The notes below the pieces were generated by a model. It searched no databases, was not told the DNA's origin, and saw nothing but the letters and a program-made list of their open reading frames with translations. A DNA stretch of 63,021 nt, filler included, from Octopus bimaculoides (Eukaryota), in NCBI RefSeq assembly GCF_001194135.2. It is 5 parts of 5 records of this genome, joined end to end, with 100 filler letters (N's around TTAATTAATTAA, not from the genome) between each part and the next. Parts side by side here need not be neighbours in the genome. Positions count along the whole stretch, not along the records: positions 45,903 to 61,757 come from NC_068986.1; 4 more parts are not named here. One strand, given 5' to 3'. Below, piece after piece: positions 45,803 to 61,934 of the stretch. Both the position numbers and the translations under genes were made by a program. Each line of letters opens with the position of its first letter. Positions within the stretch are counted from its first letter, which is position 1.

Positions 45803-45996
45803 NNNNNNNNNNNNNNNNNNNNNNNNNNNNNNNNNNNNNNNNNNNNTTAATTAATTAANNNNNNNNNNNNNNNNNNNNNNNNNNNNNNNNNNNNNNNNNN
45901 NNGGTAGGTAGGTAGGTAGGTAGGTAGGTAGGTAGGAAGGCAGGCAGGCAGGCAAACAGGCAAGCAGGCAGGCAGGCAGGTGGGTAAGTAGGTAGG

Positions 45997-46042
<46 letters not shown>

Positions 46043-48396
46043 TGAAATGCAAGTCATTCTCCACCGTTTTCACCGACACATTCCTCAGCCTGAGTCTGTA
46101 GCGGAAAACACTTTCACAAAGTACTGCAGAGTGTGGTGAATTACGGCACCATGGGTTGCAAAGAGAACTTCTTACTACTACCACCGCTGACCTTTTGTTA
46201 CTAAAGTTAATTATTGAATATATGTCATGATATGTTTATTCTTAGAAGATAATTTATGTCTGTACACTTCCTCTATTTGAAGATGATAAAAATAATCATT
46301 TAACACGTAATAAGATCGTCTGAGACATCCTAACATAGAAGTTCCTGATTATAGTGTTGTTAGGTTTTTTTCTTAAATCACTTTTAGTAAAAATTCAGAA
46401 TATTAAAAAGATATTCGTCAATTTTAGCCAATAGCATGTTTTGCATAGAACTATATTTACAAGTTCGTATAAGAAAGTTTAGTGTTCAATTTAAATTCAT
46501 TTTGAGACATTTAGTAAAGACATTCACTTTACCACGTTATACGTAGTTTTTCTGATGCTGATTTATTTTATTTTATTTTAGTTACTGTCATTAATATTAT
46601 ATTATTAATAATATAGTACAGTTGGTAAAGCCTAAACAGTAACGCCACTGGGAAAAATCCATAGCAATATTTAGTCATGAACATATACTGCATGAACTCA
46701 AACTATATTAGAGTCAACTTTACTTTTGTATGATTTCGTAGGCTTGTGTGTCATTGAAGGTATTAGTAAATATTTCTATTAAAATATAATTTTGTAAAGA
46801 ATTAATAACATTACCTGATAAATTCTTAGTAGTAATTAGTCTCATTTCTGACTACACTAGAGATGACTTTAACACCTGTTTTTCTGAGCATGTAAAATCG
46901 GCTTTGCTATTTCGATTCGTTTTTCTAGATAGTTGGTTAAGATAAAACCAATGCTTATTTTCATTTAAACCATTTGGAGCTGATGAAATAATTATTTCTC
47001 GTATACTATATTCAGGTAGATCGATAATATCTCATTGCTATAAATATCGTTCTGTTCTAATGTTAGAAATAATTGCTAATATGTATTATATGTATAACAT
47101 TTAGCGTGATATTAGATCTTAGAACATTCTACCAGCAGAGCAACACTGTACTAAAATACACTTCCTTGTAGTCTACAGAAGTTTTGTGGCGATCCAAAAG
47201 ACAGATAATTCGACATATAGTAACCAAGACACTGCAGTTATTTTTCATATATAATTCTGAAATCTATTACTGTAGATGATTAATAAACTTCTTACTGTGA
47301 CAATAGAATCACTATTTCAAGAAAAATTATATTCCCACGATAGGTGTAAAACAGGAAAAGAGACGAGTGCATTATCCTATACACACGTGTACATCTAAAT
47401 ATGTCAGTCGAAGACTTGGTCTTACAGCGTAAATTTTGGTATGTACAAGGAGGTAATTTCCTCCAAATTTTTCTAGAAGTTACTAGAAGCTACATTTTGA
47501 CGAAGAAGTGCTAAGGAAGTGGGTAATTTATCTTCTGCAATAAAAATCTGATCACCGTCTATGAAGGTCATATTTAAGAGATAAGAGAAAGACAGATTTA
47601 AAAATTATAATTCAATGAAATTTATAAATTATATATATTCTAGACGGTTTTTCGGTAGTCAATAATTCAGATCATCCTGTATGTATATCTAAAAATAAAG
47701 AGTATCAGATTTTGTATATTATTTTCCCTTTTTGCTCAATGCCTATTCTCCGTTCTACGGAAGGCTATTTAGTTTTTATAGAATACTTTGCAAGGACAGT
47801 GAATAACGGGATTAGTTGAACGCCAGATACAAAATTTTACTGTATATAAATTCAACTCTTTACATTGTTAATATGAGTCGTGTCAAAGTCGAATCTATTT
47901 TTTTATTTTTCGGGTTCCATAGAGTAAAGGTGTGTAATACTTACAACGAATGTTGTCATAATGTATTAAGTAAGGCAAATACATTAATGCCGACTCAAAT
48001 TCTTTTCTACCATTTTGTGATCGATAAACAAAAAAAAAATTACTATACTCTGCTATATTCTGCTCTATAAATTAGAGTCTGTGACAACGATGAATATTCA
48101 TTTCATATCAAATACCTAAGTGGAACGTTGATCGAATCTTCAACGTCATTGTAAATAATCTGTTGATGTTTCAGTTCAGTAATCACGTACGTAAATTTTG
48201 CGTTCAAATTTTAGTGATCGGAGACACTGTCACCAAGCATATTGTTTTTACCCAAACTTTGGTTTTGAATTTGTGAGAGCATGTCATTCGAGGAAAGTGT
48301 TTTAATTTATACATTTATCAATCCAATCAAAATGTACAGAATAATGTTTCCGCACTGGAGATAAACCAGTTTCAACTTTTGCTGTTGTATTTCCAG

Positions 48397-48571
48397 CTAT
48401 GTTCCTGGCAGGTCACCGACATGATGGATTATAGTAAATGTGTTCAAGTAGGCGTTGTTAGCTCAGGAATTATCCCTAATCTGAAAAAGAACGTTTTATA
48501 TAAACTTCGAGTATGTGGTTTCACTGGAGCTGGAGATGGAAAATTAAGTGAATTAACTTACTTCACACTTG
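48397..48571 (+). CDS. Internal exon: end of the last fibronectin type-III domain of a contactin-like adhesion protein
   Basis: Acceptor tgttgtatttccag| and donor cttg|gtaagt, phase 0 to phase 1. It encodes LCSWQVTDMMDYSKCVQVGVVSSGIIPNLKKNVLYKLRVCGFTGAGDGKLSELTYFTL-G, which fits the FN3 pattern L....Y.LRV.G...GDG..S. An alternative acceptor at 48411 is possible. Confidence 0.8.
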
Positions 48572-49944
48572 GTAAGTATAAATTAAGCATAGCTTTTTTA
48601 ATTTTTAAGTTTAGCCTTTTAATCTAAATCTTCTTGTGGGAAGCAACCTAAGGTATATAAATAATGACTCCTAGAGTTGACAGAAAGATGGAAATTATCT
48701 ATTAGTTGCTTATAAAAAATGATCAGCATTTGCCTGGTACTTATTTATTTAATCCAGAAAGATGAAAAGTAAAATCTACTGCGGTGGAATTGAAAGGGTC
48801 ACACGAAAATGAAGAGACATAAAAAGTATCTTAAGATATTCCATTTCTTTCAATTGTTGCACTTCTGTTACATAAAGGAAAATTAGACATTCGTCTGGGT
48901 ATTACAAACATATGTATATGTAAGCAACTAAGCAGAGTCTCAAATCTTAATGAACATTGAACCTGTTACTTGGTTTCCATGACGTATAAGTGATCGAGAT
49001 CACAGCAACTTGAAATGAAGTGTGAACCGCTTAGTTCAGAAATCGAAAACACGACCTTGTAATTGTGAGTAAAACACTTTAGACAATAGACCACGCATCT
49101 TCATACAAATACATATATAAATATATATATGCCACAAAACATCAGTAATCAAGAGATCCCTAAACAAGCATAAACCCTGACCAGAATTAGAATTCCAATG
49201 AAGGTCAATCACACAATATCAATGTATCGTATAATATATACTGCAAAAATACCAACAAGTAGATCAAATGTATACATCCTATCTTCAGCTGCCTAAGGAA
49301 AATCATTGTGGTTTCGATAGCTAGACAGTACCTTTCAATGTTTTGGTATCAACAGTATTCAGCGCATAAACAATTATTGAGAAATAATAGAAAGGAAAGG
49401 CCAAACATTAATGCAATATGTCCATTATGTCTAACCAGCTTATTGCTGCAACACACAGATAAGAACATCAAATCTCAAACATAAATCATTTCATACTGAT
49501 AGCAATGAAGCATAGAAATAATAACATAAAATAAAGAAAGCAGAGAAATTTAATCAAAAACATAGTCAAACGAAGAGACATAGAACTTAAAACACACTAG
49601 AGAACTATATACATTCAGAATAAATTATTGAATATACTCGAAGACAGACGTTGCCATTACGTAAAATGGAAAATAACAATAAGCTAAAGAATTATCAACA
49701 TAGAACTGTATACATATAGACTGAGCACAGAACATAACCGATAGACATTGCTACTAAACCTAAAATAAATTCTTAAAGCACAAAAATACAATCAAAACCA
49801 ACAAACTAAAACTAACGGAATAATAGCTATCATCGTTATATATATATATGATAATAATATTAGGGAAAATTTTCCAAATTTACAGGGAACAATTCAATTT
49901 AATTTATCAAAATTAAATTAAATTTCACAATATGTAATATATAA

Positions 49945-50926
49945 ATATATAATTTAGAGAAAAAACCACAATTATTTAATTCATCCATGAAAATCCACAA
50001 TCACATATAGGAAAATTTAATAAGAAAATACACTAAAAAGACCTATAATAAAAATTTAAAAAGTACAAAGTAATAAATATTAAAATAGTAAAAGTGACTA
50101 CACGTGTTTCATAACCATATTTTCAAATAGAAAATAAAATAAAAATCAAATCGATTCAAAATAAATCGATCGAAAATCAATTTTATTCAAAAATATAGCT
50201 CATCGTCAGGTCAAAATTCAATAATAATAATAAAATCAATGTATATATATCGACTAACTATAAACATCAAATAATAAATAAAAGAAAAACATTTAACAAT
50301 AATACTGAAAATAAATGCAATACTTATCTTATTGAAGCGTTAGTTTAAGCTAAAATGTTAAACGTTATACTTTTAACTTCGCGTTTATTAGAATTAAGTC
50401 ACGTGAAAATATGGCGTAAAGACAAGTAATAGAATAAAGAGATACATAAATATGTATTTAAGTTTTATTTATAAAATCAAAATGTATTTTAGCTGTAATC
50501 ATAATAAAAAATTAACTGTATTATAAATATTTACTCCAAAATTTTAAATTCTAAATAATTTAAAACTCTAATAAATTAAAACTAAAATACGTAAATTAGA
50601 TAATATATATGAAAGAATCTAAAATACTATAAATTAATATATTTACATTAAATAAGTTGACGATTAGCTATATTTTTAAATAGAATTGATTTTCCATCGA
50701 TTTATTTTGAATCAATTTGATTTTTGTTTTATTTTCTATTTGAAAATATGTTTATGAAACATGTGTAGTCTTATATTTACTATTTTAATATTTATTACTT
50801 TGTAATTTTTTGATTTTTATTATAGGTCTTTGTAGTGTAGTTACTTATTAAAATTTCCTATATGTGATTGTGGTTTTTCATGGATGAATTAAATAATTGT
50901 GTTTTTTTTCTTTAAATTATATATAT
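49945..50926. mobile_element. AT-rich foldback element with about 265-bp imperfect inverted arms
   Basis: 49945-50208 (..ccacaattatttaattcatccatgaaaa..gctcatcgtca) is the reverse complement of 50658-50926 (tgacgattagc..tttcatggatgaattaaataattgtg..). Confidence 0.8.
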
Positions 50927-53900
50927 TCACGGTGGTGCACCAGCATGACCGCAGCCACTTGGCTGAAACACATAAATAAATAAAAAAAATATATATATCG
51001 ATTTTAGCTATTATTTAAATCGATGTTAATACAAAAACTCACTTGTGAGTATTTTGCTACGTTTGATTACAGATACAATGTTTTTGCCAAATTTTNNNNN
51101 NNNNNATACATACATACATACATACATTCAAACATACTTATATACATATATACATGCATACATGCATGCATGCATGCATACATACGTACATACATACATA
51201 CATACATACATACAAATTGATGTAAGAGTGTGCGTCTTTTGTTGCTTATGTGTATACATAAATGTCTGTATGTATCGATCTATGAGTGAGCATTTGTGCC
51301 TTTGGAAATTTATATTGTTACTTGATAGATTTCTTCGATTATTACGAATAATAAAAATAACTATCTATAGTTTAATCATAATTAAATTTCTTAATCGAGA
51401 TGAAATTTCTAGATCATAATGCTTATAACTGCATACTTTATAAATTAGTCTGATAAATTAAACTGACTTTTTTCAACGTGAAACGATTTCATCAGCAAAA
51501 CTCATATTAATTTTGATATTTATATTATAATATATGTTTAAAAATATTGTAATATAAATTCAGTATCTCCAAAACAAAAACAATATCAAACATTTGTATG
51601 TAGAACTGCATGTGCTCTTCACAGAGATGTGTTTTATCAATACACACAGCCGAATTGCCACCAAACGCACCATCTTTAAACATTTATATCACAAATCAAG
51701 AATTTAGGAATTGCACAAAACTAGACTCTGGTGAGGATTTCTCTCGAGCGAACGTCTTTAACATGGCAAAAACTGCATCAAATAGACTCCCCTTCTACAT
51801 CAAGCTATACAGTACAGTTAGTAACTTACTACACAGCTCGTGTTTGTGTGTGTGTGTGTATTATACAGTGGTTATTAACAAATCATGTCACAATATCCAC
51901 TGTATCAATCCGTAGTCTCAGAAACTCTGAGAGTCAAAAGAGTCTCCCAGATTGCGGATGGAAAGTGGAAGTTACTGATAACCTGGTGTGTTGAATTCGG
52001 TAAGTGGTTTTCATTTTCATATGAATGCATATGATTCAGTTTTGAAATGCATGAACGTCAATTCTCGGAGCAGTACATAAATACTAGAAAACAATTTTGC
52101 TTTTGACTGAGCACAAGCCTTTATTTCACAAGAAGAACAGAAGAAATGGATTGGTGTTACTGAAAGCTGCATTAGCACTAGAATAATCTGAAAATGAACT
52201 ACAAAAATTTCACGTTTACAATGTGATTTGGCTTCTATTTCTAGTAGGTTGATATAATGAACGGTTGAGATTAGCCATCCTTTCTTTTCCTGTAGAAAAC
52301 CATTTTGAAATGTTGTACATCACTTCACATGCCCCAGATCGCATTTATAATCAAAATGAGTGATGAATACTTAATGCCTGGTAGGTCATTCGAAAGCTTT
52401 AGATATAATAAATACCATTTCTAAGCTTTTGGCTCGAATTTATTTATCTGATAATATATAAATATTTTAGCTAATGTACTTTCTAAAGGCTTCACAAAAA
52501 TATTTTTTATATATCATCGCAATAGTTATTCAAATAATTTACTTTTTCATATTTTGTTAGAAAGTAGATGAAAAGTCTTCAGTTGTTGAATTAAACAGAC
52601 AAGAGAAAAGATTATTATATTTAACTTCTTTTTTGTTTTAGCTCCAATGGCCAGTTTCCAAAATATTTTGTATTATGCTGCCAAAAAATATTTCTATGAT
52701 TTGGCTCTGGAACTTTAGTTTCAACTGGAATAAAGAGAGTTATTAACATGTTGATGACTTGACTTAGGTATTGTTTCGTTCCACGAATGAAAAGAGAGCA
52801 TTAGGAATACAAGTGAACTGAAATCTTTGCAATTGAAGGCTGAAACTATATAAATAAAAAAAGACCTTCGACATAAACAGAAGACAGATCTACAAGAAAT
52901 AGCGGTCAAATCTCTTTCATATCACACTCGCTGTCTTAAGATAAGAAGAACACTGTACATTATATATTTCTAGATAGTTCTAAATATAAAGGAGGGTTTA
53001 GAATGGCCTGCCTCTTATTATAGTTCTGCTCGATCAAGGCTGAATCTAGCAATTCAATTTGTACTCTATAATCCCCCTTATTTCATCTGGAATTTGGTAA
53101 CACTCGGTCTTCTTTTTAGGGTATTAGTCACCTAAATAAACGTGTATAGATATAATTGTATTAATCAAAAAGTAAAAGAGAGTAGTAGTCCGAATCTATA
53201 TACTTCTTTACTCTGACGTTCACTAACTACAGAGTAAATATAGTTACAGATTATAACCTTGTTGAAGAAGGTTAGAGTTGGTTGTTATCTGTTGTATGTC
53301 GCAACGGGAACGCTTTAGAAAAAATTATATCTTAACTATGGAATGACATCAATGACATTATCATGCACACAACAGTTATAGCTGTTGTTAAATTATGAAG
53401 AAATATCAAAGACATAATCTGTAATAAGCATAACATATTATAGATAAATCATTAAAAAAAATCGGTAAATAGATAAAATGACTAGTAAGTTAATGTCTTA
53501 AATTAAGTGTGATTGCGTATATTATTAGAATATTCTAGAACCTAGTGCTCAATGGAGCCGCTACAGTCTTTCATTCACTAGAATTATGGGTTAAAGTCCA
53601 GTCAGATGTGCTTTACTGATATAAAATAAATATATATTGCAGCAGACTAAAATCTATTAAATCTTTACGAACGTAGCTGGGTGACATTATATCGACGTTA
53701 TATCTTCGATTTTTAATCTCCACAATACTTGAATTGAAATAAGTTGGTAAGAATTCACAGAAAGAGTTCCGCAATTTAATTCCACATGAAAGCAATGCAA
53801 TTTCCCTTTTGTTTTAGAGAGATATTCTATTTCCAATAGATTTAGAATTTTGAGTAACATTAAGCAACCTTCACGGATAAACAACCGAGAACGTTGCCTT

Positions 53901-54469
53901 ATTCATTAATGAGTCAATATTTTCTCGTTCGTAACTCTTTTTTGTTTTTAGAGTGTGTTTCCTTATTGACGCAGATATAAAAAAATTTTAAATAACATTT
54001 CTCGAGGTAGAAGTGATAAATATATAATAAAGAATATTATCTTCAAATATTTTCTCTTCTACCTATATGAGCTATACACCATCTTGAGAACAAGTTTCTT
54101 AAGATATACCATTTTAAAAGAAATTATGCAATTTTGCGTTGTCCAGAAACTTCTAATAATCATAGTTTTGAAAATAACCGTGAACTTCCGGGGATACAGC
54201 TACTCTTTATTGATTAAGGAAGGGTAACTGGACGTCAATTCTAACACTGTTCTTTCCCCAAAACTCTAAGAGAATTTATATTTTTTGTGAATACTATGTT
54301 TATCAAATAGCGTACGGAAATAACAAAAATGCACTTGTTCTGTTCTGTTCTTTTTATTTTGTGTACATGTCTAATAATGCTTTCAAATTTTGGCCCGAGG
54401 TCAATAATTCTGGAGGAATGGTTAGTCGCATACAACGATCCCCCACTTTTCAACTGTTTGTAATTTCAT

Positions 54470-54605
54470 TGAACCGGAAGGGTTGAAAGGCAAAAATCGA
54501 CATCAGCGGAATGTGAATTTAGAACGAAATGGCGCTAAGCACTTTGTCTGTCTTAGAACGAAATTCCACGAAGCACATTGTCTGGCTTGCAAGCGATTCT
54601 TTTAC
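54470..54605 (-). mobile_element. Old SINE family A remnant, present in both duplication units
   Basis: ttgaaaggcaaaaatcgacatcagcggaatgtgaatttagaac has a homolog at 58980-59090. Confidence 0.7.
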
Positions 54606-54889
54606 TGCATTTGCCCTGTTTACATATCCAATAATAATGATATTTTCTATCCCAAAATTTAAGGAAATTCATATTGGTTCGCATTTCATCATTGTTACCA
54701 AATCAAATATAGTATCTATGGAAATAGCAAAAAATGGATTTGTTCTGTTATTAATTCATGTTTACATATCTAATAATAGTGAACATAATTTGATTTCTTG
54801 TTAATGTATGATAATATGAAAATAATCACCAATGGAATAATTTGATAAAATCAAAATTTTATAAATCTTTTCTTTCAAATATTTTCCAG

Positions 54890-55020
54890 GTGGTCAGGTG
54901 AAATATAATCCGCACGATTTTGAAGTCTTGGCGATTTCAAGCACGATTCATGCAAAGTTTGAAATAATTTTAATTCTATATATTATAACAATCTACTCAC
55001 CGAACAACATTTTTACTTAA
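54890..55020 (+). CDS. Terminal exon copy 1 (GPI-signal-like tail)
   Basis: Acceptor tctttcaaatattttccag|. A phase-1 join to 48571 gives FTLG-GQVKYNPHDFEVLAISSTIHAKFEIILILYIITIYSPNNIFT*. AATAAA at 55321. Confidence 0.72.
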
Positions 55021-56552
55021 AATTGAAAATTCTAAATTTTGTTTTTATTTAAATATATTNNNNNNNNNNNNNNNNNNNNNNNNNNNNNNNNNNNNNNNNN
55101 NNNNNNNNNNNNNNNNNNNNNNNNNNNNNNNNNNNNNTATTTAAAAATAATTTTTAGCTTTAGTTATTTTCATATCTTTACTATATTTCTACATAAAATC
55201 AAAGTATCTATTATGCATCAATTTTCAAAATTACAAAGAACATAAGAATGAATTTTTAAAATTTATTTGAATTTTCCCCTAAGTGTACCAGTGTCTTAAT
55301 TTAGTCTTAATTCATACACGAATAAAAAGTTCTTTAGAAATAAATCTAATAAATGATAATTATGATAATATTGTTGTTGTTTTTATCGTTGTCCCAAGAT
55401 CTGCTCTGTGCTTATAGGCGTATAAGGAAAAAGCATTGAAAGTATGACCAATCCGCTTATTCGTATAAGAGAAAGTACATTCGTTATATTCTTATGAATA
55501 TAGGCAGCGCCATTAAGCTCATGTGATCTAATCCGTCATTGGTGTAACTGCACCACCATCAACATTACTCGGCAATTTCAAAGGTTTCATTCTACTGCCC
55601 GCAATTGGGCCAGGCCTCGATATAGATACAATGATTCCGGCTGTTTACCAGAATTGGAGGATAGAGAGGGAAGTGGTATTCCAGTGGGACCTATCAACAG
55701 AAATGGAAGTGGCCCAGGTCTGTGATTAAGGCCTTTGTTATCTGCCTTATTTGCTGGCCGACCGACTCTCCGTAACCTACGTCCAGGTCAGCTACTTAGA
55801 GGAAACAGAAATTGTGCTTAGTACAATATCATGAGTCAAAATGTCCACAGTATCAATCCGTAGTCTAGCAAGTCCTGTGAGGTAAAAAAATGTCTCTCAG
55901 TTTGCGGAGGGAAACTAAAAGCAACTGACTGAGGCAATGGAACAAACAACAAAATGCTGCTGAGTGGTAAGTGGTTTTCGTTTCCACAAGAAGACATTGT
56001 TTATTTTTGAAATGCACGAACGTCATATCTAGAAAAAATCTTTATTTGAATTGAAATGTTTTTAGCGAAAATTTAATCAACAATTAATGAACATTATTAA
56101 CATCATATATATATATATANNNNNNNNNNNNNNNNNNNNNNNNNNNNNNNNNNNNNNNNNNNNNNNNNNNNNNNNNNNNNNNNNNNNNNNNNNNNNNNNN
56201 NNNNNNNNNNNNNNNNNNNNNNNNNNNNNNNNNNNNNNNNNNNNNNNNNNNNNNNNNNNNNNNNNNNNNNNNNNNNNNNNNNNNNNNNNNNNNNNNNNNN
56301 NNNNNNNNNNNNNNNNNNNNNNNNNNNNNNNNNNNNNNNNNNNNNNNNNNNNNNNNNNNNNNNNNNNNNNNNNNNNNNNNNNNNNNNNNNNNNNNNNNNN
56401 NNNNNNNNNNNNNNNNNNNNNNNNNNNNNNNNNNNNNNNNNNNNNNNNNNNNNNNNNNNNNNNNNNNNNNNNNNNNNNNNNNNNNNNNNNNNNNNNNNNN
56501 NNNNNNNNNNNNNNNNNNNNNNNNNNNNNNNNNNNNNNNNNNNNNNNNNNNN

Positions 56553-56690
56553 GAATGGATCGACCTCCGAAAGGATGAAAGGCAAAGTTGAACCCAGCGA
56601 AATTTGAATTCGAAAAGTACAACCACAAGAAATGCTGCTTGGCCTCCGTCCAGCATGTCAACGATTCTGCCAGTGCGCTGGCAGAATCAT
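56553..56690 (-). mobile_element. SINE family A fragment
   Basis: Contains cgacctccgaaaggatgaaaggcaaagttg..aacgattctgccag. Confidence 0.75.
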
Positions 56691-59144
56691 TTAAACAATA
56701 ATCTAAATGAAATATATCTCCGTCATCTGAACATCCAAAGTTTTCATCTATCTCTCGAAATCAATACTTGTACGTAAATCATAATCTGGATGTACATTTC
56801 TTAATAATGTGTACTTGAGACAAACCATTTGAGGGGAAATTTCGATCAAATACATCGTCTTCACTATATTATCATTCTTACTACATATCAAGAATTTATG
56901 AACAACATAAAACTTCCCATTAACAAATTTACCCTTCCTCCGTCCTGGGTCGCCTCGCCAAATATCAAGAACTATAATTAATTTAATCGAGTAATGCGCT
57001 CCCTAAATTTCTGGCTCTGTGACTGTGTTAGAAACAAAACTTAACATTGTAAACCAGTTTGGCTTTTCGGCGTCACATTTATAGTGTGATTTGTGGAAGA
57101 TTTGATTGAACTTTCTGGTAGATTAATCAAATGACCTGATTTTGGCTTCCACTTTGACATGGATATCGACCGTTTTGAATAATTTCACTTTTGTTTTTAA
57201 TGTATTCCATTCTGTTTCTATAGAAAACCATTCCGAAATGGTGTCGCACACATGTAAAGTCATTACTTCCCTTTTCCCCCGACCTCATTTATAGTCATAA
57301 TGAATGATAAATATTTAATGCCAACTAGGTTGTTCGAAAGCTTTAGATATAATAAATGCGATTTCTACGTTTGAGACTCAACACTATTTATCTGAAAATA
57401 TGTAAACATTTTAACTTATATAATCTACAAAGACTTCACAAAAATAATTCCGTCGAAATAGCTATACAAATATTTTACTTTTTGCTATTTTGTCAGAAAC
57501 TAGTTGAAAGTTTTTCAGTTGTTGAATTCGAAGACAAGAGACATTATGAGAATAATCGTCTTGTTTTGTTACACCCAATTTTCAGATACTAAAAATGTTT
57601 GGCATCGTACTGCCCAGCAACATCTCTATGAATTGGCTCGGAAACTCCAACTGCAAAATTGAAATGTGTTAGCACCCCGCTTTAGCAGGAGGTAAAGAGA
57701 GGAGTATCTTTACGTTTGGATGAATTCACTGCAGTATGATTTCGTTCGAGTAATGAAAAAGAAGCATTAGAGTCATAAGTGAAATGAACTTATTCCAGTC
57801 GAATGCTGAAACTATATTTCAATATTTAACTTATCATACAAGCCACAGAAGAAGATTTGGTTTCACAATTTAACCGACTTACAAAAAACTGCAGCGAAAT
57901 CTCTTTCATACTACATACGCCATCTTAAGATATGAAGGACAAATTACATTATATATCCCTAGACATTCCTAAATATGAGGGAGAACTATCATAGCTCTGC
58001 TCAATCAAGGATAACTTTGGCAATCAAACTTGTTCTCTATAATTCCCCTTACTTCACGACTGAAATTTGCTGATGTTGTTTCTTTGTTAGACATTAGTCA
58101 CCTAAATGAACTTGCGTATAATAATTGAATTACTCAAAAAGCGAAAGAGGTTAGTGGTCCGTATCCGTCACTAATTTACTTCTTTTACTCTGAAATTCAC
58201 TAACCACAGAGTAAATATAGTTCCAAGTTATAAACATGTCGAAGAAGGTTAGAGCTGATTGTTATCTTTGGTATTTCGCTACAGTAATGCTTTAAAAAAA
58301 ACGGACATCGAGGACATCATACACACAAGAGTAATAGTTTTCGTTAAATTATGAAGCAAAGCAATAACGAAGACACAATCTGCAATAAACATAGCATTTA
58401 TAATAGGATTATAAACGATTACTGAGTAAATATCTTAAGTGTGATTCGTATATCATTAAAACGTTATATGACAAACAAGCTCAGTGGAGCCGCTATTGTA
58501 CTTCTTTCACCAACATCAGTGGCACTGCTGCGGCTATGGGTCAAAGCTCAGTCACATAAACTTTCTGATATAAAAATAAGTATATAGTGCAGCGTATTAA
58601 AATTTATTAAACCTTTACTAGCGTAGCTGAGTAATATTATATCAGTATTATATCTTCGAATTCCAATCTACACGGTACGTGAAGTCAATACAGTTGATAA
58701 TAATTCGCAGTTTAATCCAGGATTTTAATTTCACGCATCATAGTCTGCCGAAACGATTGCAATTATCCTTTTGTTTTACAGAGAGTAGATTTAGAATAAT
58801 ATAAAGCAATCTTCAAGGATAAACAACTGAGAAATTTGCCTTAGTCATAAGCAAGTCCAGATTTCATCATAAACAGTCATCGTTCAAAACTCTTTCTACA
58901 GGGTGTTCAGTTATGACGTAAGCATAAAAACGATACACATTTCTCGTGGTAGAAGTGACAAGTATATAACAAACAAAAGTTGAAAGGCAAAAGTTGACAT
59001 CAACAGAATGTGAATTCAGAACGTAAAGACGAACGAAATGCCGCTGAGCCCCTTTCCCAGCGTGCATGCGTTTCCTCTACCGAATTTGCCTTGTCTAAAA
59101 AAAAATAAAATGCGCCCTTTTAAAGCCTACCCAGNNNNNNNNNN

Positions 59145-59290
59145 GCGTTACTCATTTTTGCCAGCTGAGTGGCCAAGAGCAAAGTGAAATGAAGTGTTTT
59201 GCTCAAGAACACAACGCGTCGCCCGGTCCAGGAATCGAAACCACAATCTTACAATCATGATGCTGACAACCCAACCACTAACCCACGCGC
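59145..59290 (-). mobile_element. SINE family C fragment, only in duplication unit 2
   Basis: Contains ctcatttttgccagctgagtgg..gctcaagaacacaacgcg..ggaatcgaaacc. Confidence 0.8.
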
Positions 59291-59577
59291 CTCCACATTT
59301 ACCTTGTTTACATATCCAATAATAATGATAATTATTTTTATCCCAAAATTTAAGGGAATCTATATTGATTTGCATTTCGTCATTGTTACCAAATCAAATA
59401 AAATATCTATGAAAATTGCCAAAAAATGGTTTGTTCTGTTAATTCGTCTTTACATATCTAATAATAGTGATCATAATTTGATTTCTTATCAATATATGCT
59501 AATGTGAAAATAATCACCAGTGGAATATTTTAACAAATTCAAAATTTTACAAATCGCTTCTTTCAAATATTTTCCAG

Positions 59578-59708
59578 GTGGTCAGGTTAAATATAATCCG
59601 CACGATCTTGAAGTATTGGCGATTTCAAACTTGATTCAAGCAAATTATGGAATAATTTTAATTTTAAATGTCATAACAGTCTACTCACTTAACAATTTAT
59701 TTACTTGA
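59578..59708 (+). CDS. Terminal exon copy 2 (GPI-signal-like tail)
   Basis: Same acceptor context, same length (131 nt) and same phase as copy 1. It encodes G-GQVKYNPHDLEVLAISNLIQANYGIILILNVITVYSLNNLFT*. AATAAA at 59726 and 60012. Confidence 0.68.
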
Positions 59709-60059
59709 AAAGTCAAAATGAAGAAAATAAATATAAGGAATGTAATACTTTTTAGAAATTTTAATATGCAACATATTTTATCGAAAATGCTAAATTCAAA
59801 ATAAAGTATATAAATTTTTATTTCAGTTGACTTCATATATTCATTATATTCAACTTAAAATTAAAATGTCTACTATGCATTAAATTTCAAAATTTCAAAA
59901 TTACGAAGAACATAATAACATTTTAGAAATAATTCCTATTTTCTCCTACATGTATCTTTGTCCTGTATTATTCTTAACGCTTACAGAAAATTGAATGAAA
60001 ATTTCTATAGAAATAAAAGACATCTAATAAATAACAATAATGACACTCTTCTTGTTGTG

Positions 60060-60493
60060 AAGGCGGTGAGCTGGCAGAAACGTTAGCACGCCGGGCGAAA
60101 TTCTTAGCGGTGATTCGTCTGCCATTACCTTCTGAGTTCAAATTCCGCCGAGGTCGACTTTACCTTCCATGCTTTCAGGGTCAATGAATTAAGTACCAGT
60201 TACGCACTGGGGTAGATGTAATCGACTTAATCCCATTCTCTGTCCTTGTTTGTCCCCTCTATGTTTAGCCCCTTTTTGGGCAATAAAGAAATGAGAAACG
60301 TTAGCACGCCGGGCGAAATGCATAACCGTATACCATCTATCTATACGTTCTGAGTTCAAATTCCGCCGAGGTGGACTTTGCCTTTCATCCTTTTGGAGTC
60401 GACAAATTTAATACCAGTTGCGTACTGGGGTCGATCTAATCCACTGGCCACCACCTCAAAAATTTAGAGCCTTGTGCTTAGACTAGAAAAGAT
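60060..60493 (+). mobile_element. SINE family A dimer, full length, inserted only in unit 2
   Basis: Two monomers, each with gttagcacgccgggcgaaat..ttctgagttcaaattccgccgagg. Flanks tcttgttgtg / tcctgttgtg resemble a TSD. Confidence 0.93.
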
Positions 60494-61700
60494 TTTTCCT
60501 GTTGTGTTTTCGTTGTTGTCTCAAATCGGCTTTGTGTGAGTAGGTTTTGAGAACACATACCTTTTAGCCTTGACCAATCCATTTATTGTACAATAGAAGC
60601 TACATTGATTAATGTACTCTTTGTATTGAAACTTAGTTCGAAGGTCGAATGACCTCGTTGTATTGTTATGAATATAGGCGGCGCCACTAAGCACGTGTGA
60701 TGTAATCTGTCAGCTGGTGTATCTCCACCACCATCATCACCAACGTTACTCGGTAAGTTTCAAAGGATTTACACCACTACCCGCAATTGGGCCAGGTCTC
60801 TTTATAGATACAATGATTCTTGCAGTGCACCATCCTTTTCATACTACCAGTATTAGAGGTTAGAAGTGGAAATGGTATTCAGGTGGTAACCTGCCGCCAG
60901 AAATGTTAGTGACACAGTGCTGTGAATAATGCTTTAGGTATCTGCCTTATTTACTAGCAGGCCGACTCGCAACAACCTGCGTCCAAGTAAGCTACTTCGA
61001 GAAAACTGAAATTGTAGCTAGTCGCACATCATGACACAAAAATGCTGCTGGTGAGTCGAGTACGGTATGTGGGTTTCATCTCCATATGAAAACATACAGT
61101 TCATTTTGGAAATATCTGAACGTCATATCCAGAATGACGGTCTTTTGTTTAAAATGTTTTATGGCGAATTAGAAAGTGATCAACCTTATTAACAGAGTTT
61201 AAATATTTTTTAGTGGTAATGTCTAAAGGAAATAAAAATAACAGTAAAAATGACATTGATTAATTATAATGATTAATGAGTGTAGTTTTAGTAATTTAGA
61301 GAAATACTACAAATTAAATAATGAAAATCACGACGATATATCGTCGACGAAAACAATCGTAATCAGCAATAATGCAAGGGACATATTTTAATAATTCATA
61401 TATGAAAAAATTTACCTCTAGACATTTCATAACATTCTGATAGTTTCAAAGTTTCTAATCACTTTTAAAGATAAATTGCAGAATTTCTTTAGCTTGGTAT
61501 GAAGAGGCAATTTATTTAATTATAACATAAAAAACTACGATGTTTCAAAATGCTGGAAGAACAAAGAATTTATATTAAATAATGTTTACACATATTTGAA
61601 TAGTACAGTATATACGTGTGTATATGTGTGGTGGAGGAAAATATGTATATATTATGTATCATATTTAAAGCATACACAAATGCTCACATAAACATATGCA

Positions 61701-61744
<44 letters not shown>

Positions 61745-61934
61745 TATATATTTATATNNNNNNNNNNNNNNNNNNNNNNNNNNNNNNNNNNNNNNNNNNN
61801 NTTAATTAATTAANNNNNNNNNNNNNNNNNNNNNNNNNNNNNNNNNNNNNNNNNNNNGCATGGCCACAGTCAAATGACTGAAACAAGTAAAAGGGTAAAA
61901 GAGTAAGAGTAAAGATATATATATATGTATATAT

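What the first reader, a model, noticed from the sequence alone, without database searches (positions are those of the whole stretch)
48397..59708. Two intact, duplicated alternative terminal exons giving a contactin-like protein two different GPI-signal tails
Seen in sequence: the FN3 exon ends in phase 1 (..FTL-G|gtaagt). Two downstream exons (54890-55020 and 59578-59708) share the acceptor context, length and phase, have no indels or internal stops, and each has its own stop and downstream AATAAA. The N-terminal part (GGQVKYNPHD.EVLAIS) is nearly invariant, with synonymous changes such as gtg/gtt and gtc/gta. The putative omega-site and hydrophobic region has diverged (SSTIHAKFEIILILYIITIYSP versus SNLIQANYGIILILNVITVYSL). 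Established: contactins are Ig/FN3 proteins anchored through a C-terminal GPI signal. Inference: mutually exclusive last exons could tune GPI attachment, secretion or shedding, or 3' UTR identity of a neural adhesion molecule. I cannot tell whether this has been described.
Basis: partly seen in the sequence, partly recalled or inferred. Interest (0 to 1): 0.78.

Follow-up and report, generated by a model that had tools for sequence, protein, structure and literature searches.

The report
Duplicated last exon of octopus contactin
The end of the Octopus bimaculoides contactin gene carries two tandem copies of its last coding exon (the membrane-anchor signal): the first is the one current gene models use, and the second is intact but unannotated, so it is a plausible but unproven alternative ending of a well-known kind.

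Summary
The piece is the 3' end of the Octopus bimaculoides contactin gene. The FN3 half-exon (48397-48571, donor G|gtaagt, phase 1) joined to e1 (54890-55020) reproduces exactly the C-terminus of RefSeq XP_052824420.1. e2 (59578-59708) is a second 131-nt copy with the same acceptor, phase and stop position. No assembly gap touches an exon or a splice site.

e1 and e2 lie in a ~3.8-kb tandem segmental duplication (52278-56034 and 57206-61134). The background is 78-82% identical, with many indels. The exon is 84% identical, less than the 282 nt of intron just upstream (89.6%) but more than any same-size background window. The 269 bp ending at the stop codon have no indel.

If e2 had drifted freely, an intact, still hydrophobic e2 has a probability of roughly 0.01-0.05 (a post-hoc test).

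Against use of e2: gene models in three Octopus species end only in the e1-type tail, and I could not obtain any transcript or orthologous DNA. The part that differs is the cleaved GPI signal, so the mature proteins would differ by about one residue (F/L) plus the 3' UTR.

Verdict: the duplication is real and e2 is a candidate alternative last exon (about 45%), and nearly as likely an unused relic (about 42%). Tandem-duplicated 3' exons are a known kind, so interest is modest.

The parts
48397..48571 (+). Penultimate coding exon: the C-terminal half of the last FN3 domain of contactin. Phase-0 acceptor, phase-1 donor (G|gtaagt).
   Evidence: It is identical to residues 1045-1103 of XP_052824420.1 (P0182). 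Pfam fn3 matches weakly (E 0.02) because only half a domain is present. Compared with another octopus (L001) it shows 8 synonymous and 2 nonsynonymous differences.
54890..55020 (+). e1: the annotated last coding exon, encoding the GPI-type signal tail GGQVKYNPHDFEVLAISSTIHAKFEIILILYIITIYSPNNIFT*.
   Evidence: It matches the last 43 residues of P0182 at 100%. The O. sinensis and O. vulgaris orthologues end in a tail that differs at 4 of 43 residues.
59578..59708 (+). e2: an intact, unannotated paralogous copy of the last exon, encoding GGQVKYNPHDLEVLAISNLIQANYGIILILNVITVYSLNNLFT*.
   Evidence: It has the same length, phase, acceptor and stop position as e1, with 84% nt and 72% aa identity. No protein carrying this tail was found.
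52278..56034 (+). Duplication unit 1: about 2.6 kb of intron, e1, and about 1 kb of 3' flank ending in repeat x2.
   Evidence: Self-BLAST and alignments.
57206..61134 (+). Duplication unit 2: colinear with unit 1, contains e2 and ends in repeat x3. It carries an extra ~600-bp insert at 60059-60654.
54618..54889 (+). Conserved proximal intron block upstream of e1. Its partner is 59306-59577 upstream of e2.
   Evidence: 89.6% identity against a 78-82% background. It exceeds all 1718-1729 background windows of the same size.
59306..59577 (+). Conserved proximal intron block upstream of e2.
51868..52070 (.). Boundary repeat x1. Related copies are x2 (55814-56034) and x3 (about 61000-61134). The order is x1-U1-x2-gap-U2-x3.
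   Evidence: The arrangement fits unequal crossing-over between flanking repeats (inference).
55339..55353 (+). Pair of AATAAA motifs about 320 nt after the e1 stop. They align with a pair at 60012-60031 after e2 and are candidate poly(A) signals.
   Evidence: Not statistically informative in this AT-rich DNA.
55504..55717 (+). Extra exon of the superseded model XP_014777082.1. That model leaves e1 at a GC donor (54951|54952), passes through this exon, and ends in a further exon at 57586-57662.
   Evidence: The model was dropped in the newer RefSeq annotation. It hints at read-through past e1 only if it was transcript-based.

Best explanation
A ~3.8-kb stretch at the 3' end of the O. bimaculoides contactin gene was duplicated in tandem. 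The stretch held the last intron's distal 2.6 kb, the last coding exon and about 1 kb of 3' flank. The duplication probably arose by unequal crossing-over between copies of a flanking repeat (x).

e1 is the working last exon. e2, 4.7 kb further on, has an identical 3' splice site, the same phase, an open frame, a stop at the same codon and aligned AATAAA motifs.

I commit to this reading: e2 has been kept usable and is a minor or tissue-restricted alternative last exon. It would be reached when the FN3 donor skips e1 and e1's poly(A) site is bypassed.

The diverged half of the exon is the GPI-attachment signal, which is cleaved off in the ER. The two products would therefore differ in the mature protein by about one residue (F11L). 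What would really differ is the efficiency of GPI attachment (anchored versus released protein) and the 3' UTR.

Shown: the duplication, the intactness of e2, the contactin identity, and e1 as the annotated end. Inferred: use of e2, GPI anchoring, and the mechanism of choice between the exons.
For: Identity of the gene and of e1.

Extent of the duplication and the boundary repeats.

Signs of constraint on e2:
- 30 nt are identical across the acceptor.
- No indel occurs in the 269 bp ending at the stop. In the background only 2-3.6% of 131-column windows are gap-free, and 0 of about 1840 231-column windows are.
- The identities of the exon, of its first 50 nt and of the proximal intron each exceed every same-size background window.
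- In neutral simulations, P(no premature stop) is 0.25-0.32.
- For the 3' half alone, P(no stop and hydropathy at least as high as observed) is 0.10, and P(gap-free) is 0.14.
- Codons 1-17 give dN/dS 0.13 with dS (0.20) close to background. This argues against a recent gene conversion across the exon.
- 4 of 5 replacements in the hydrophobic stretch are conservative (I/V, I/L, P/L).
- The best 13-residue hydropathy is 2.42 for e2 and 2.35 for e1. Both lie within the range of 42 homologous contactin tails.

Control: between species, the working FN3 exon shows the same pattern of a better-conserved upstream intron (89% versus 82-83%).

Precedent: tandem-duplicated 3' exons that swap C-termini are common among functional human events, 77 of 236 (PMC9741552).
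Against: No protein or gene model with the e2 tail turned up. The RefSeq names for O. bimaculoides and O. sinensis carry no isoform label, and O. vulgaris also ends in the e1 type.

No transcript evidence could be obtained.

e1 is transcribed first and has the same splice site, so it should win by default.

Exon identity is not higher than the adjacent intron. A gene-conversion tract covering about -270 to +50 would explain that block without any selection.

Codons 18-43 evolve near neutrality (dN/dS 0.72, not significant).

With O. sinensis e1 as the reference, e2 carries 10 of the 12 amino-acid differences. Orthologous working tails keep their hydrophobic stretch 100%.

e2 replaces the favourable S-S-T small-residue triplet with S-N-L and places an Asn inside the hydrophobic run.

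All the p-values are post hoc, computed on a feature that was chosen because it is intact.
Confidence: 0.45

Rival explanations
1. e2 is an unused by-product of the segmental duplication, a relic or pseudo-exon. It is still intact by luck, and a gene-conversion event from e1 refreshed the block from about -270 to +50. All contactin mRNA ends at e1.
For: - Only e1-type tails appear in the gene models of three species.
- The most conserved part is mostly intron and stops mid-exon (3/50 versus 18/81 differences, Fisher p = 0.015). That is what the end of a conversion tract looks like.
- The 3' half diverges at the background rate (77.8% identity) with dN/dS 0.72.
- e2 carries 10 of the 12 amino-acid differences relative to O. 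sinensis e1.
- Given a conversion, the remaining 81 nt stay gap-free and stop-free by chance at about 0.06-0.08, which is not rare genome-wide.
- e2's omega region and hydrophobic run are degraded relative to e1.
Against: - Adding retention of hydrophobicity lowers the chance figure to about 0.014.
- The stop is kept at the same codon through a stop-to-stop change.
- Synonymous divergence within the supposedly converted codons 1-17 (dS 0.20) is not reduced, although this rests on only 2 changes.
- An identical, unblocked 3' splice site downstream of a terminal exon would be expected to be used at least occasionally.
Confidence: 0.42
2. The tandem arrangement is a scaffolding error. The contig with e2 (56553-61757) belongs elsewhere in the genome as a dispersed duplicate, so e2 is not inside the contactin transcription unit.
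For: The two contigs are joined only across a 433-N gap of estimated length (56120-56552). Continuity cannot be tested from the window.
Against: - Homology is colinear, and the shared boundary repeat occurs in the order x1-U1-x2 ... U2-x3. That order is what a tandem duplication produces.
- The superseded Gnomon model joined exons across the gap (55717>57586, canonical GT-AG).
- Identity of 69-82% rules out haplotypes.
Confidence: 0.08
3. e2 is the last exon of a separate, very recent contactin paralogue. Its FN3 exon would be hidden in the 56120-56552 gap.
For: A 175-bp exon would physically fit in a 433-bp gap.
Against: - The duplicated unit starts at 52278/57206, which is 3.7 kb downstream of the FN3 exon. 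Nothing in 56553-57205 matches 48572-52277.
- No other gene is called within 10 kb downstream of the contactin gene in the O. bimaculoides, O. vulgaris or O. sinensis annotations.
- The next closest protein to this contactin after the Octopus orthologue clusters is only 53% identical.
- The other Octopus paralogues have unrelated tails.
Confidence: 0.03

Closest known systems
Tandem-duplicated 3'-terminal exon substitutions (homologous alternative last exons), such as the tropomyosin 3' exons; surveyed in PMC9741552 and treated separately from internal mutually exclusive exons in PMC5740500
   Same: The last coding exon is duplicated in tandem. Both copies keep length, phase, acceptor and stop, and they would give homologous alternative C-termini chosen by splicing plus cleavage and polyadenylation. 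C-terminal swaps are the enriched class (77 of 236 human events).
   Different: Use of the second copy is unproven here and no isoform is annotated. The duplication is young (dS about 0.28) and possibly lineage-specific, whereas most human events are ancient. The swapped region is a cleaved signal rather than part of the mature protein.
CDC42 alternative homologous last exons, giving prenylated versus palmitoylated C-termini
   Same: Two homologous terminal exons would encode alternative lipid-anchoring signals on an otherwise identical protein expressed in neurons.
   Different: In CDC42 the two tails specify chemically different lipid modifications, and both isoforms are experimentally established. 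Here both tails look like the same kind of signal (GPI) and nothing has been tested.
Contactins: vertebrate CNTN1-6 and invertebrate contactin (Ig x6, FN3 x4, GPI anchor; the invertebrate forms have an N-terminal C-type lectin domain)
   Same: The window encodes the last FN3 half-domain and the C-terminal signal of the O. bimaculoides orthologue. The tail motif is shared with mollusc and arthropod contactins.
   Different: My library searches found no description of a contactin with a duplicated GPI-signal exon. The transcript-derived contactin paralogues of other cephalopods that I examined each show a single tail type.
Alternative membrane-attachment exons in Ig-superfamily adhesion molecules: NCAM GPI versus transmembrane forms, and Drosophila Dscam1 exon 17.1/17.2 (from memory)
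   Same: Alternative exons at or near the 3' end change how a neural adhesion molecule is attached or sorted.
   Different: The NCAM exons are not homologous duplicates and switch the type of anchor. Dscam exon 17 is an internal mutually exclusive pair encoding transmembrane segments. Here both copies encode the same class of signal.

Membership tests
Contactin (Ig/FN3, GPI-anchored neural adhesion molecule) | Full-length sequence homology to contactins | tested here: met
   FN3+e1 is identical to the C-terminus of XP_052824420.1 'contactin [Octopus bimaculoides]'. That protein's close relative P0001 hits 251 proteins at E <= 1e-20, and the named ones among the 120 listed are mostly called contactin, from molluscs, arthropods and a lamprey.
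Contactin (Ig/FN3, GPI-anchored neural adhesion molecule) | Ig domains followed by FN3 domains | tested here: met
   The precomputed Pfam hits for P0182, P0001 and P0184 are Ig_3, I-set, Ig_2 and fn3. The window exon itself gives a weak fn3 match to profile positions 52-82 of 84.
Contactin (Ig/FN3, GPI-anchored neural adhesion molecule) | C-terminal GPI-attachment signal: small omega-site residues, a short polar spacer, and a hydrophobic end with no cytoplasmic domain | tested here: inconclusive
   Only a heuristic test was possible. Both tails have small residues (A-I-S-S-T versus A-I-S-N-L), a 7-8 residue spacer and an 11-13 residue hydrophobic run, which is too short for a transmembrane helix. 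The best 13-residue hydropathy is 2.35 and 2.42, against a median of 2.64 and a 5th percentile of 2.04 in 42 homologous tails. No GPI predictor was available. e2's run is broken by an Asn.
Contactin (Ig/FN3, GPI-anchored neural adhesion molecule) | Demonstrated GPI anchoring (release by PI-PLC) | not testable with these tools
   This needs an experiment.
Tandem-duplicated alternative last exons | Two adjacent homologous exons with the same length and phase, each with an intact acceptor and its own stop | tested here: met
Tandem-duplicated alternative last exons | Both exons joined to the same upstream donor in mature transcripts, in a mutually exclusive way | not testable with these tools
   No RNA data were reachable. 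Indirect evidence is negative: only e1-type tails appear in the models of three species, and look-ups of ORFs around e2 returned nothing.
Tandem-duplicated alternative last exons | Both copies evolving under constraint, that is, more conserved than neutral flanks | tested here: inconclusive
   The exon exceeds every background window and is indel-free and stop-free (p about 0.01-0.05). However, it is no more conserved than the adjacent 282 nt of intron, and dN/dS does not differ significantly from 1.
Tandem-duplicated alternative last exons | Both copies retained in related species | not testable with these tools
   No orthologous DNA was returned, because the gene ranges are 165-199 kb.

The most novel reading that the evidence does not exclude
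e2 is a selectively maintained, tissue-specific alternative last exon. Octopus neurons would then make one contactin with two different GPI-attachment signals and two 3' UTRs. That would tune the ratio of anchored to released protein, or mRNA localisation, without changing the mature adhesion domain. It would be a duplicated 'signal-only' exon swap that my literature searches did not find described for GPI-anchored proteins.
Probability: 0.3. Interest if true: 0.5.

Novelty: new member of a known kind. Interest (0 to 1): 0.33.

Why it matters
If e2 is used, it would be a clean natural case in which exon duplication varies only a cleaved GPI signal and the 3' UTR of a neural adhesion molecule. 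That would allow a direct test of whether the sequence of a GPI signal is used to regulate anchoring versus shedding. It would also add a cephalopod example to the list of tandem-duplicated C-terminal exon swaps. If e2 is not used, this is an ordinary young segmental duplication inside a gene, and its only value is as an annotation note.

Tried and rejected
- The word-index protein search with the 101-aa joined peptide found nothing, although exact matches exist. The exhaustive search was needed to find them.
- The profile search carrying both tails returned only a genomic ORF of the FN3 exon from another octopus. Neither e1 nor e2 has an in-frame ATG, so the collection's gene caller would not have called them.
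- Exact look-ups of the e2 ORF, a minus-strand ORF over e2's 3' end and an intronic ORF near e1 were not on record.
- Orthologous DNA from O. vulgaris, O. sinensis and the new O. bimaculoides assembly was not returned, because the gene ranges exceed 100 kb.
- Haplotype explanation: rejected, because identity is 69-82% with many indels.
- Hidden FN3 exon in the gap: rejected as unlikely, because the unit boundary lies 3.7 kb downstream of the FN3 exon and no extra gene is annotated.
- Dscam-like docking and selector RNA pairing between the intron and the conserved blocks: only one 11-mer match, at chance level.
- The conserved intron block as a hidden coding exon: both copies share an ORF and the indels preserve the frame, but the differences are mostly nonsynonymous, so this was rejected.
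- Rfam and tRNA scans found only sub-threshold hits on microsatellites.
- AATAAA as evidence for a poly(A) site: uninformative at 2.6 per kb.
- Literature searches found no description of duplicated GPI-signal exons or of octopus contactin isoforms.

Full report
**1. What is in the sequence**

The piece (45903-61757, 31% G+C) holds only three stretches that match contactin proteins.

- The first is the exon at 48397-48571. It has acceptor tttccag| and donor CTTG|gtaagt (phase 1), and it encodes LCSWQVTD...LSELTYFTL(G).
- The second is e1 at 54890-55020.
- The third is e2 at 59578-59708.

Both e1 and e2 are 131 nt long and sit behind the same 20-nt polypyrimidine/AG acceptor. Thirty nt are identical across the junction. 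Both complete the split Gly codon and run to a stop at codon 44 (TAA and TGA).

They differ at 21 of 131 nt. Codons 1-17 (GGQVKYNPHD(F/L)EVLAIS) carry 3 changes, 2 of them synonymous. The remaining codons carry 18 changes.

The four assembly gaps lie in intron, 3' flank or inter-unit DNA. None interrupts an exon, a splice site or a reading frame. The 433-N gap (56120-56552) does separate the contig with FN3 and e1 from the contig with e2.

**2. What gene it is**

An exhaustive HMMER search with FN3+e1 found a 1077-aa protein ending in a near-identical 101 residues. This protein and the other members of the two close clusters are:

- CAI9724527.1, contactin-like, O. vulgaris;
- XP_029638021.1, contactin-like, O. 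sinensis;
- XP_014777082.1 and XP_052824420.1, 'contactin [Octopus bimaculoides]'.

XP_052824420.1 ends exactly in FN3+e1, so the window is O. bimaculoides and the 48571>54890 junction is the annotated one.

More distant hits are annotated contactins of molluscs, arthropods and a lamprey, with Ig and fn3 Pfam domains. Their tails share the motif GG.V.(F/Y)(D/N)P..(D/E)(V/I)(L/M)A, followed by small residues and a hydrophobic end. This is the layout of a GPI-attachment signal (established knowledge for contactins). 'Contactin-like with a GPI-type tail' is therefore supported.

**3. Extent and origin of the duplication**

Self-comparison shows two colinear units, 52278-56034 and 57206-61134. Each holds about 2.6 kb of intron, the exon and about 1 kb of 3' flank. 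Lineage-specific insertions interrupt them at 54035-54481 in unit 1 and 60059-60654 in unit 2.

A ~200-bp repeat (x) sits before unit 1 and at the end of each unit, in the order x1-U1-x2-gap-U2-x3. This order is what unequal crossing-over between flanking repeats would leave (inference).

Identity of 69-82% with 2.4-4.5 indel events per 100 bp rules out uncollapsed haplotypes. The unit starts 3.7 kb downstream of the FN3 exon, and nothing upstream of unit 2 matches the FN3-e1 intron. A hidden FN3 copy in the gap is therefore unlikely. No other gene is called within 10 kb downstream of contactin in three Octopus annotations.

**4. Is e2 more conserved than chance?**

Aligned identity by partition:

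| Partition | Identity |
|---|---|
| Far intron | 78-82% |
| 3' flanks | 79-82% |
| Proximal 282 nt of intron | 89.6% |
| Exon, whole | 84.0% |
| Exon, first 50 nt | 94% |
| Exon, last 81 nt | 77.8% |

However, the exon, its 5' part and the proximal intron each exceed every same-size window of the remaining duplicated DNA (0 of about 1700-2400 windows).

The 269 bp ending at the stop have no indel. In the background only 2-3.6% of 131-column windows are gap-free, and none of about 1840 231-column windows are.

I ran neutral simulations using the background substitution spectrum. They give:

- P(no premature stop in 43 codons) = 0.25-0.32;
- for the 3' half alone, P(no stop) = 0.43-0.56;
- for the 3' half alone, P(no stop and hydropathy at least as high as observed) = 0.10;
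- for the 3' half alone, P(81 columns gap-free) = 0.14.

Depending on whether e1 is assumed frozen, and on whether the 5' block is assumed to have been refreshed by conversion, the chance of an intact, still hydrophobic e2 under drift is about 0.01-0.05. This is a post-hoc figure on a feature that was picked because it is intact.

dN/dS is 0.13 for codons 1-17 and 0.72 for codons 18-43, and neither is significant. dS (0.28 overall, 0.20 in codons 1-17) equals the background. That argues weakly against a recent conversion across the exon.

As a control, the working FN3 exon compared with another octopus (Logan contigs L001-L004) shows 8 synonymous and 2 nonsynonymous changes. It also shows the same tendency for the upstream intron to be better conserved, 89% versus 82-83%.

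**5. Evidence against use of e2**

No protein with the e2 tail turned up in any search. The RefSeq names for O. bimaculoides and O. sinensis carry no isoform label, which implies a single product per gene.

Orthologous working tails keep their hydrophobic stretch unchanged between O. bimaculoides and O. sinensis, in this gene and in a paralogue. e2 differs from e1 at 5 of those 18 positions, although 4 of the 5 replacements are conservative.

Relative to the O. sinensis e1 tail, e2 carries 10 of the 12 differences and e1 carries 2. e1 and e2 share Q3 and H9 against L3 and Q9 in O. sinensis. This fits either a duplication younger than the species split or gene conversion. I could not decide between these without orthologous DNA.

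e2 also turns the S-S-T small-residue triplet into S-N-L and places an Asn in the hydrophobic run. Even so, its best 13-residue hydropathy (2.42) is within the range of 42 homologous tails.

A superseded Gnomon model leaves e1 at a GC donor and continues into 55504-55717 and 57586-57662. If that model was transcript-based, it shows read-through past e1 into unit 2. The newer annotation dropped it.

**6. How it would work**

Terminal exons are selected by splicing together with cleavage and polyadenylation, not by the mechanisms used for internal mutually exclusive exons (PMC5740500). e2 can be used only when the FN3 donor skips e1 and e1's poly(A) site is bypassed. The 3' splice sites are identical and e1 is transcribed first, so e1 should dominate unless it is repressed. 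I found no convincing docking or selector complementarity.

A GPI signal is removed at the omega site. The mature products would therefore differ only at F11L. Any functional difference would lie in attachment efficiency or in the 3' UTR.

**7. Comparison with what is known, and verdict**

Tandem-duplicated 3' exons that swap homologous C-termini are a recognised and enriched class: 77 of 236 human events, with the tropomyosin 3' exons as one example (PMC9741552). CDC42's two lipid-anchor tails are the nearest functional analogy, cited from memory. My literature searches found no description of a duplicated GPI-signal exon or of octopus contactin isoforms.

I rate this as a real duplication. 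e2 is a candidate alternative last exon (about 45%). It is nearly as likely an unused relic kept intact by chance and conversion (about 42%). A scaffolding error (about 8%) and a separate paralogue (about 3%) are minor possibilities.

Novelty: at most a new member of a known kind. Interest: modest.

Noticed in passing
window 49945-50208 and 50658-50924: Inverted repeat, 91% identical over 267 bp with arms about 450 bp apart, inside the FN3-e1 intron. Probably a transposable-element pair or a foldback element.
   Followed up: no
window 60076-60227, 60294-60445 and 56560-56619 (reverse): A ~150-bp element occurs twice in direct orientation (79.6% identity) within an insert specific to unit 2. 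A partial reverse copy lies just after the 433-N gap. It looks SINE-like, but no tRNA-like part was detected.
   Followed up: partly
window 55504-55717 and 57586-57662: The superseded RefSeq model XP_014777082.1 splices out of e1 at a GC donor (54951|54952) into these two exons. This gives a 95-residue tail with no match to the contactin relatives examined; its unit-2 counterpart is broken into pieces of 55-80% identity. It hints at read-through transcription beyond e1.
   Followed up: partly
window 48700-49380 versus L001-L004: About 680 bp of the O. bimaculoides intron is absent from the corresponding contigs of another octopus species (Logan runs SRR11869384, SRR11869385, SRR11869391 and SRR11869394). 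It is likely a lineage-specific insertion.
   Followed up: no
window 54529-54804 and 59199-59507: Both copies of the conserved intron block hold an ORF in the same frame, and their indels are frame-preserving (3 nt; +1/-1; 3 nt). The differences are mostly nonsynonymous, so I judged this a coincidence and not a hidden exon.
   Followed up: yes
window 45903-46060, 51106-51230 and 61600-61757: (TATC)n and (CATA)n microsatellites. They produce sub-threshold mir-297 and mir-466 Rfam hits that are spurious.
   Followed up: yes
proteins P0182 and P0069 (O. bimaculoides models): Both O. bimaculoides contactin models contain a stretch (..SMSRCGTVFGKVSLNFCFTVSVYLFPARNTHSTKNIRSSMA..) where O. sinensis and O. 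vulgaris have FN3 sequence. This suggests a mis-predicted internal exon in the O. bimaculoides annotation.
   Followed up: no
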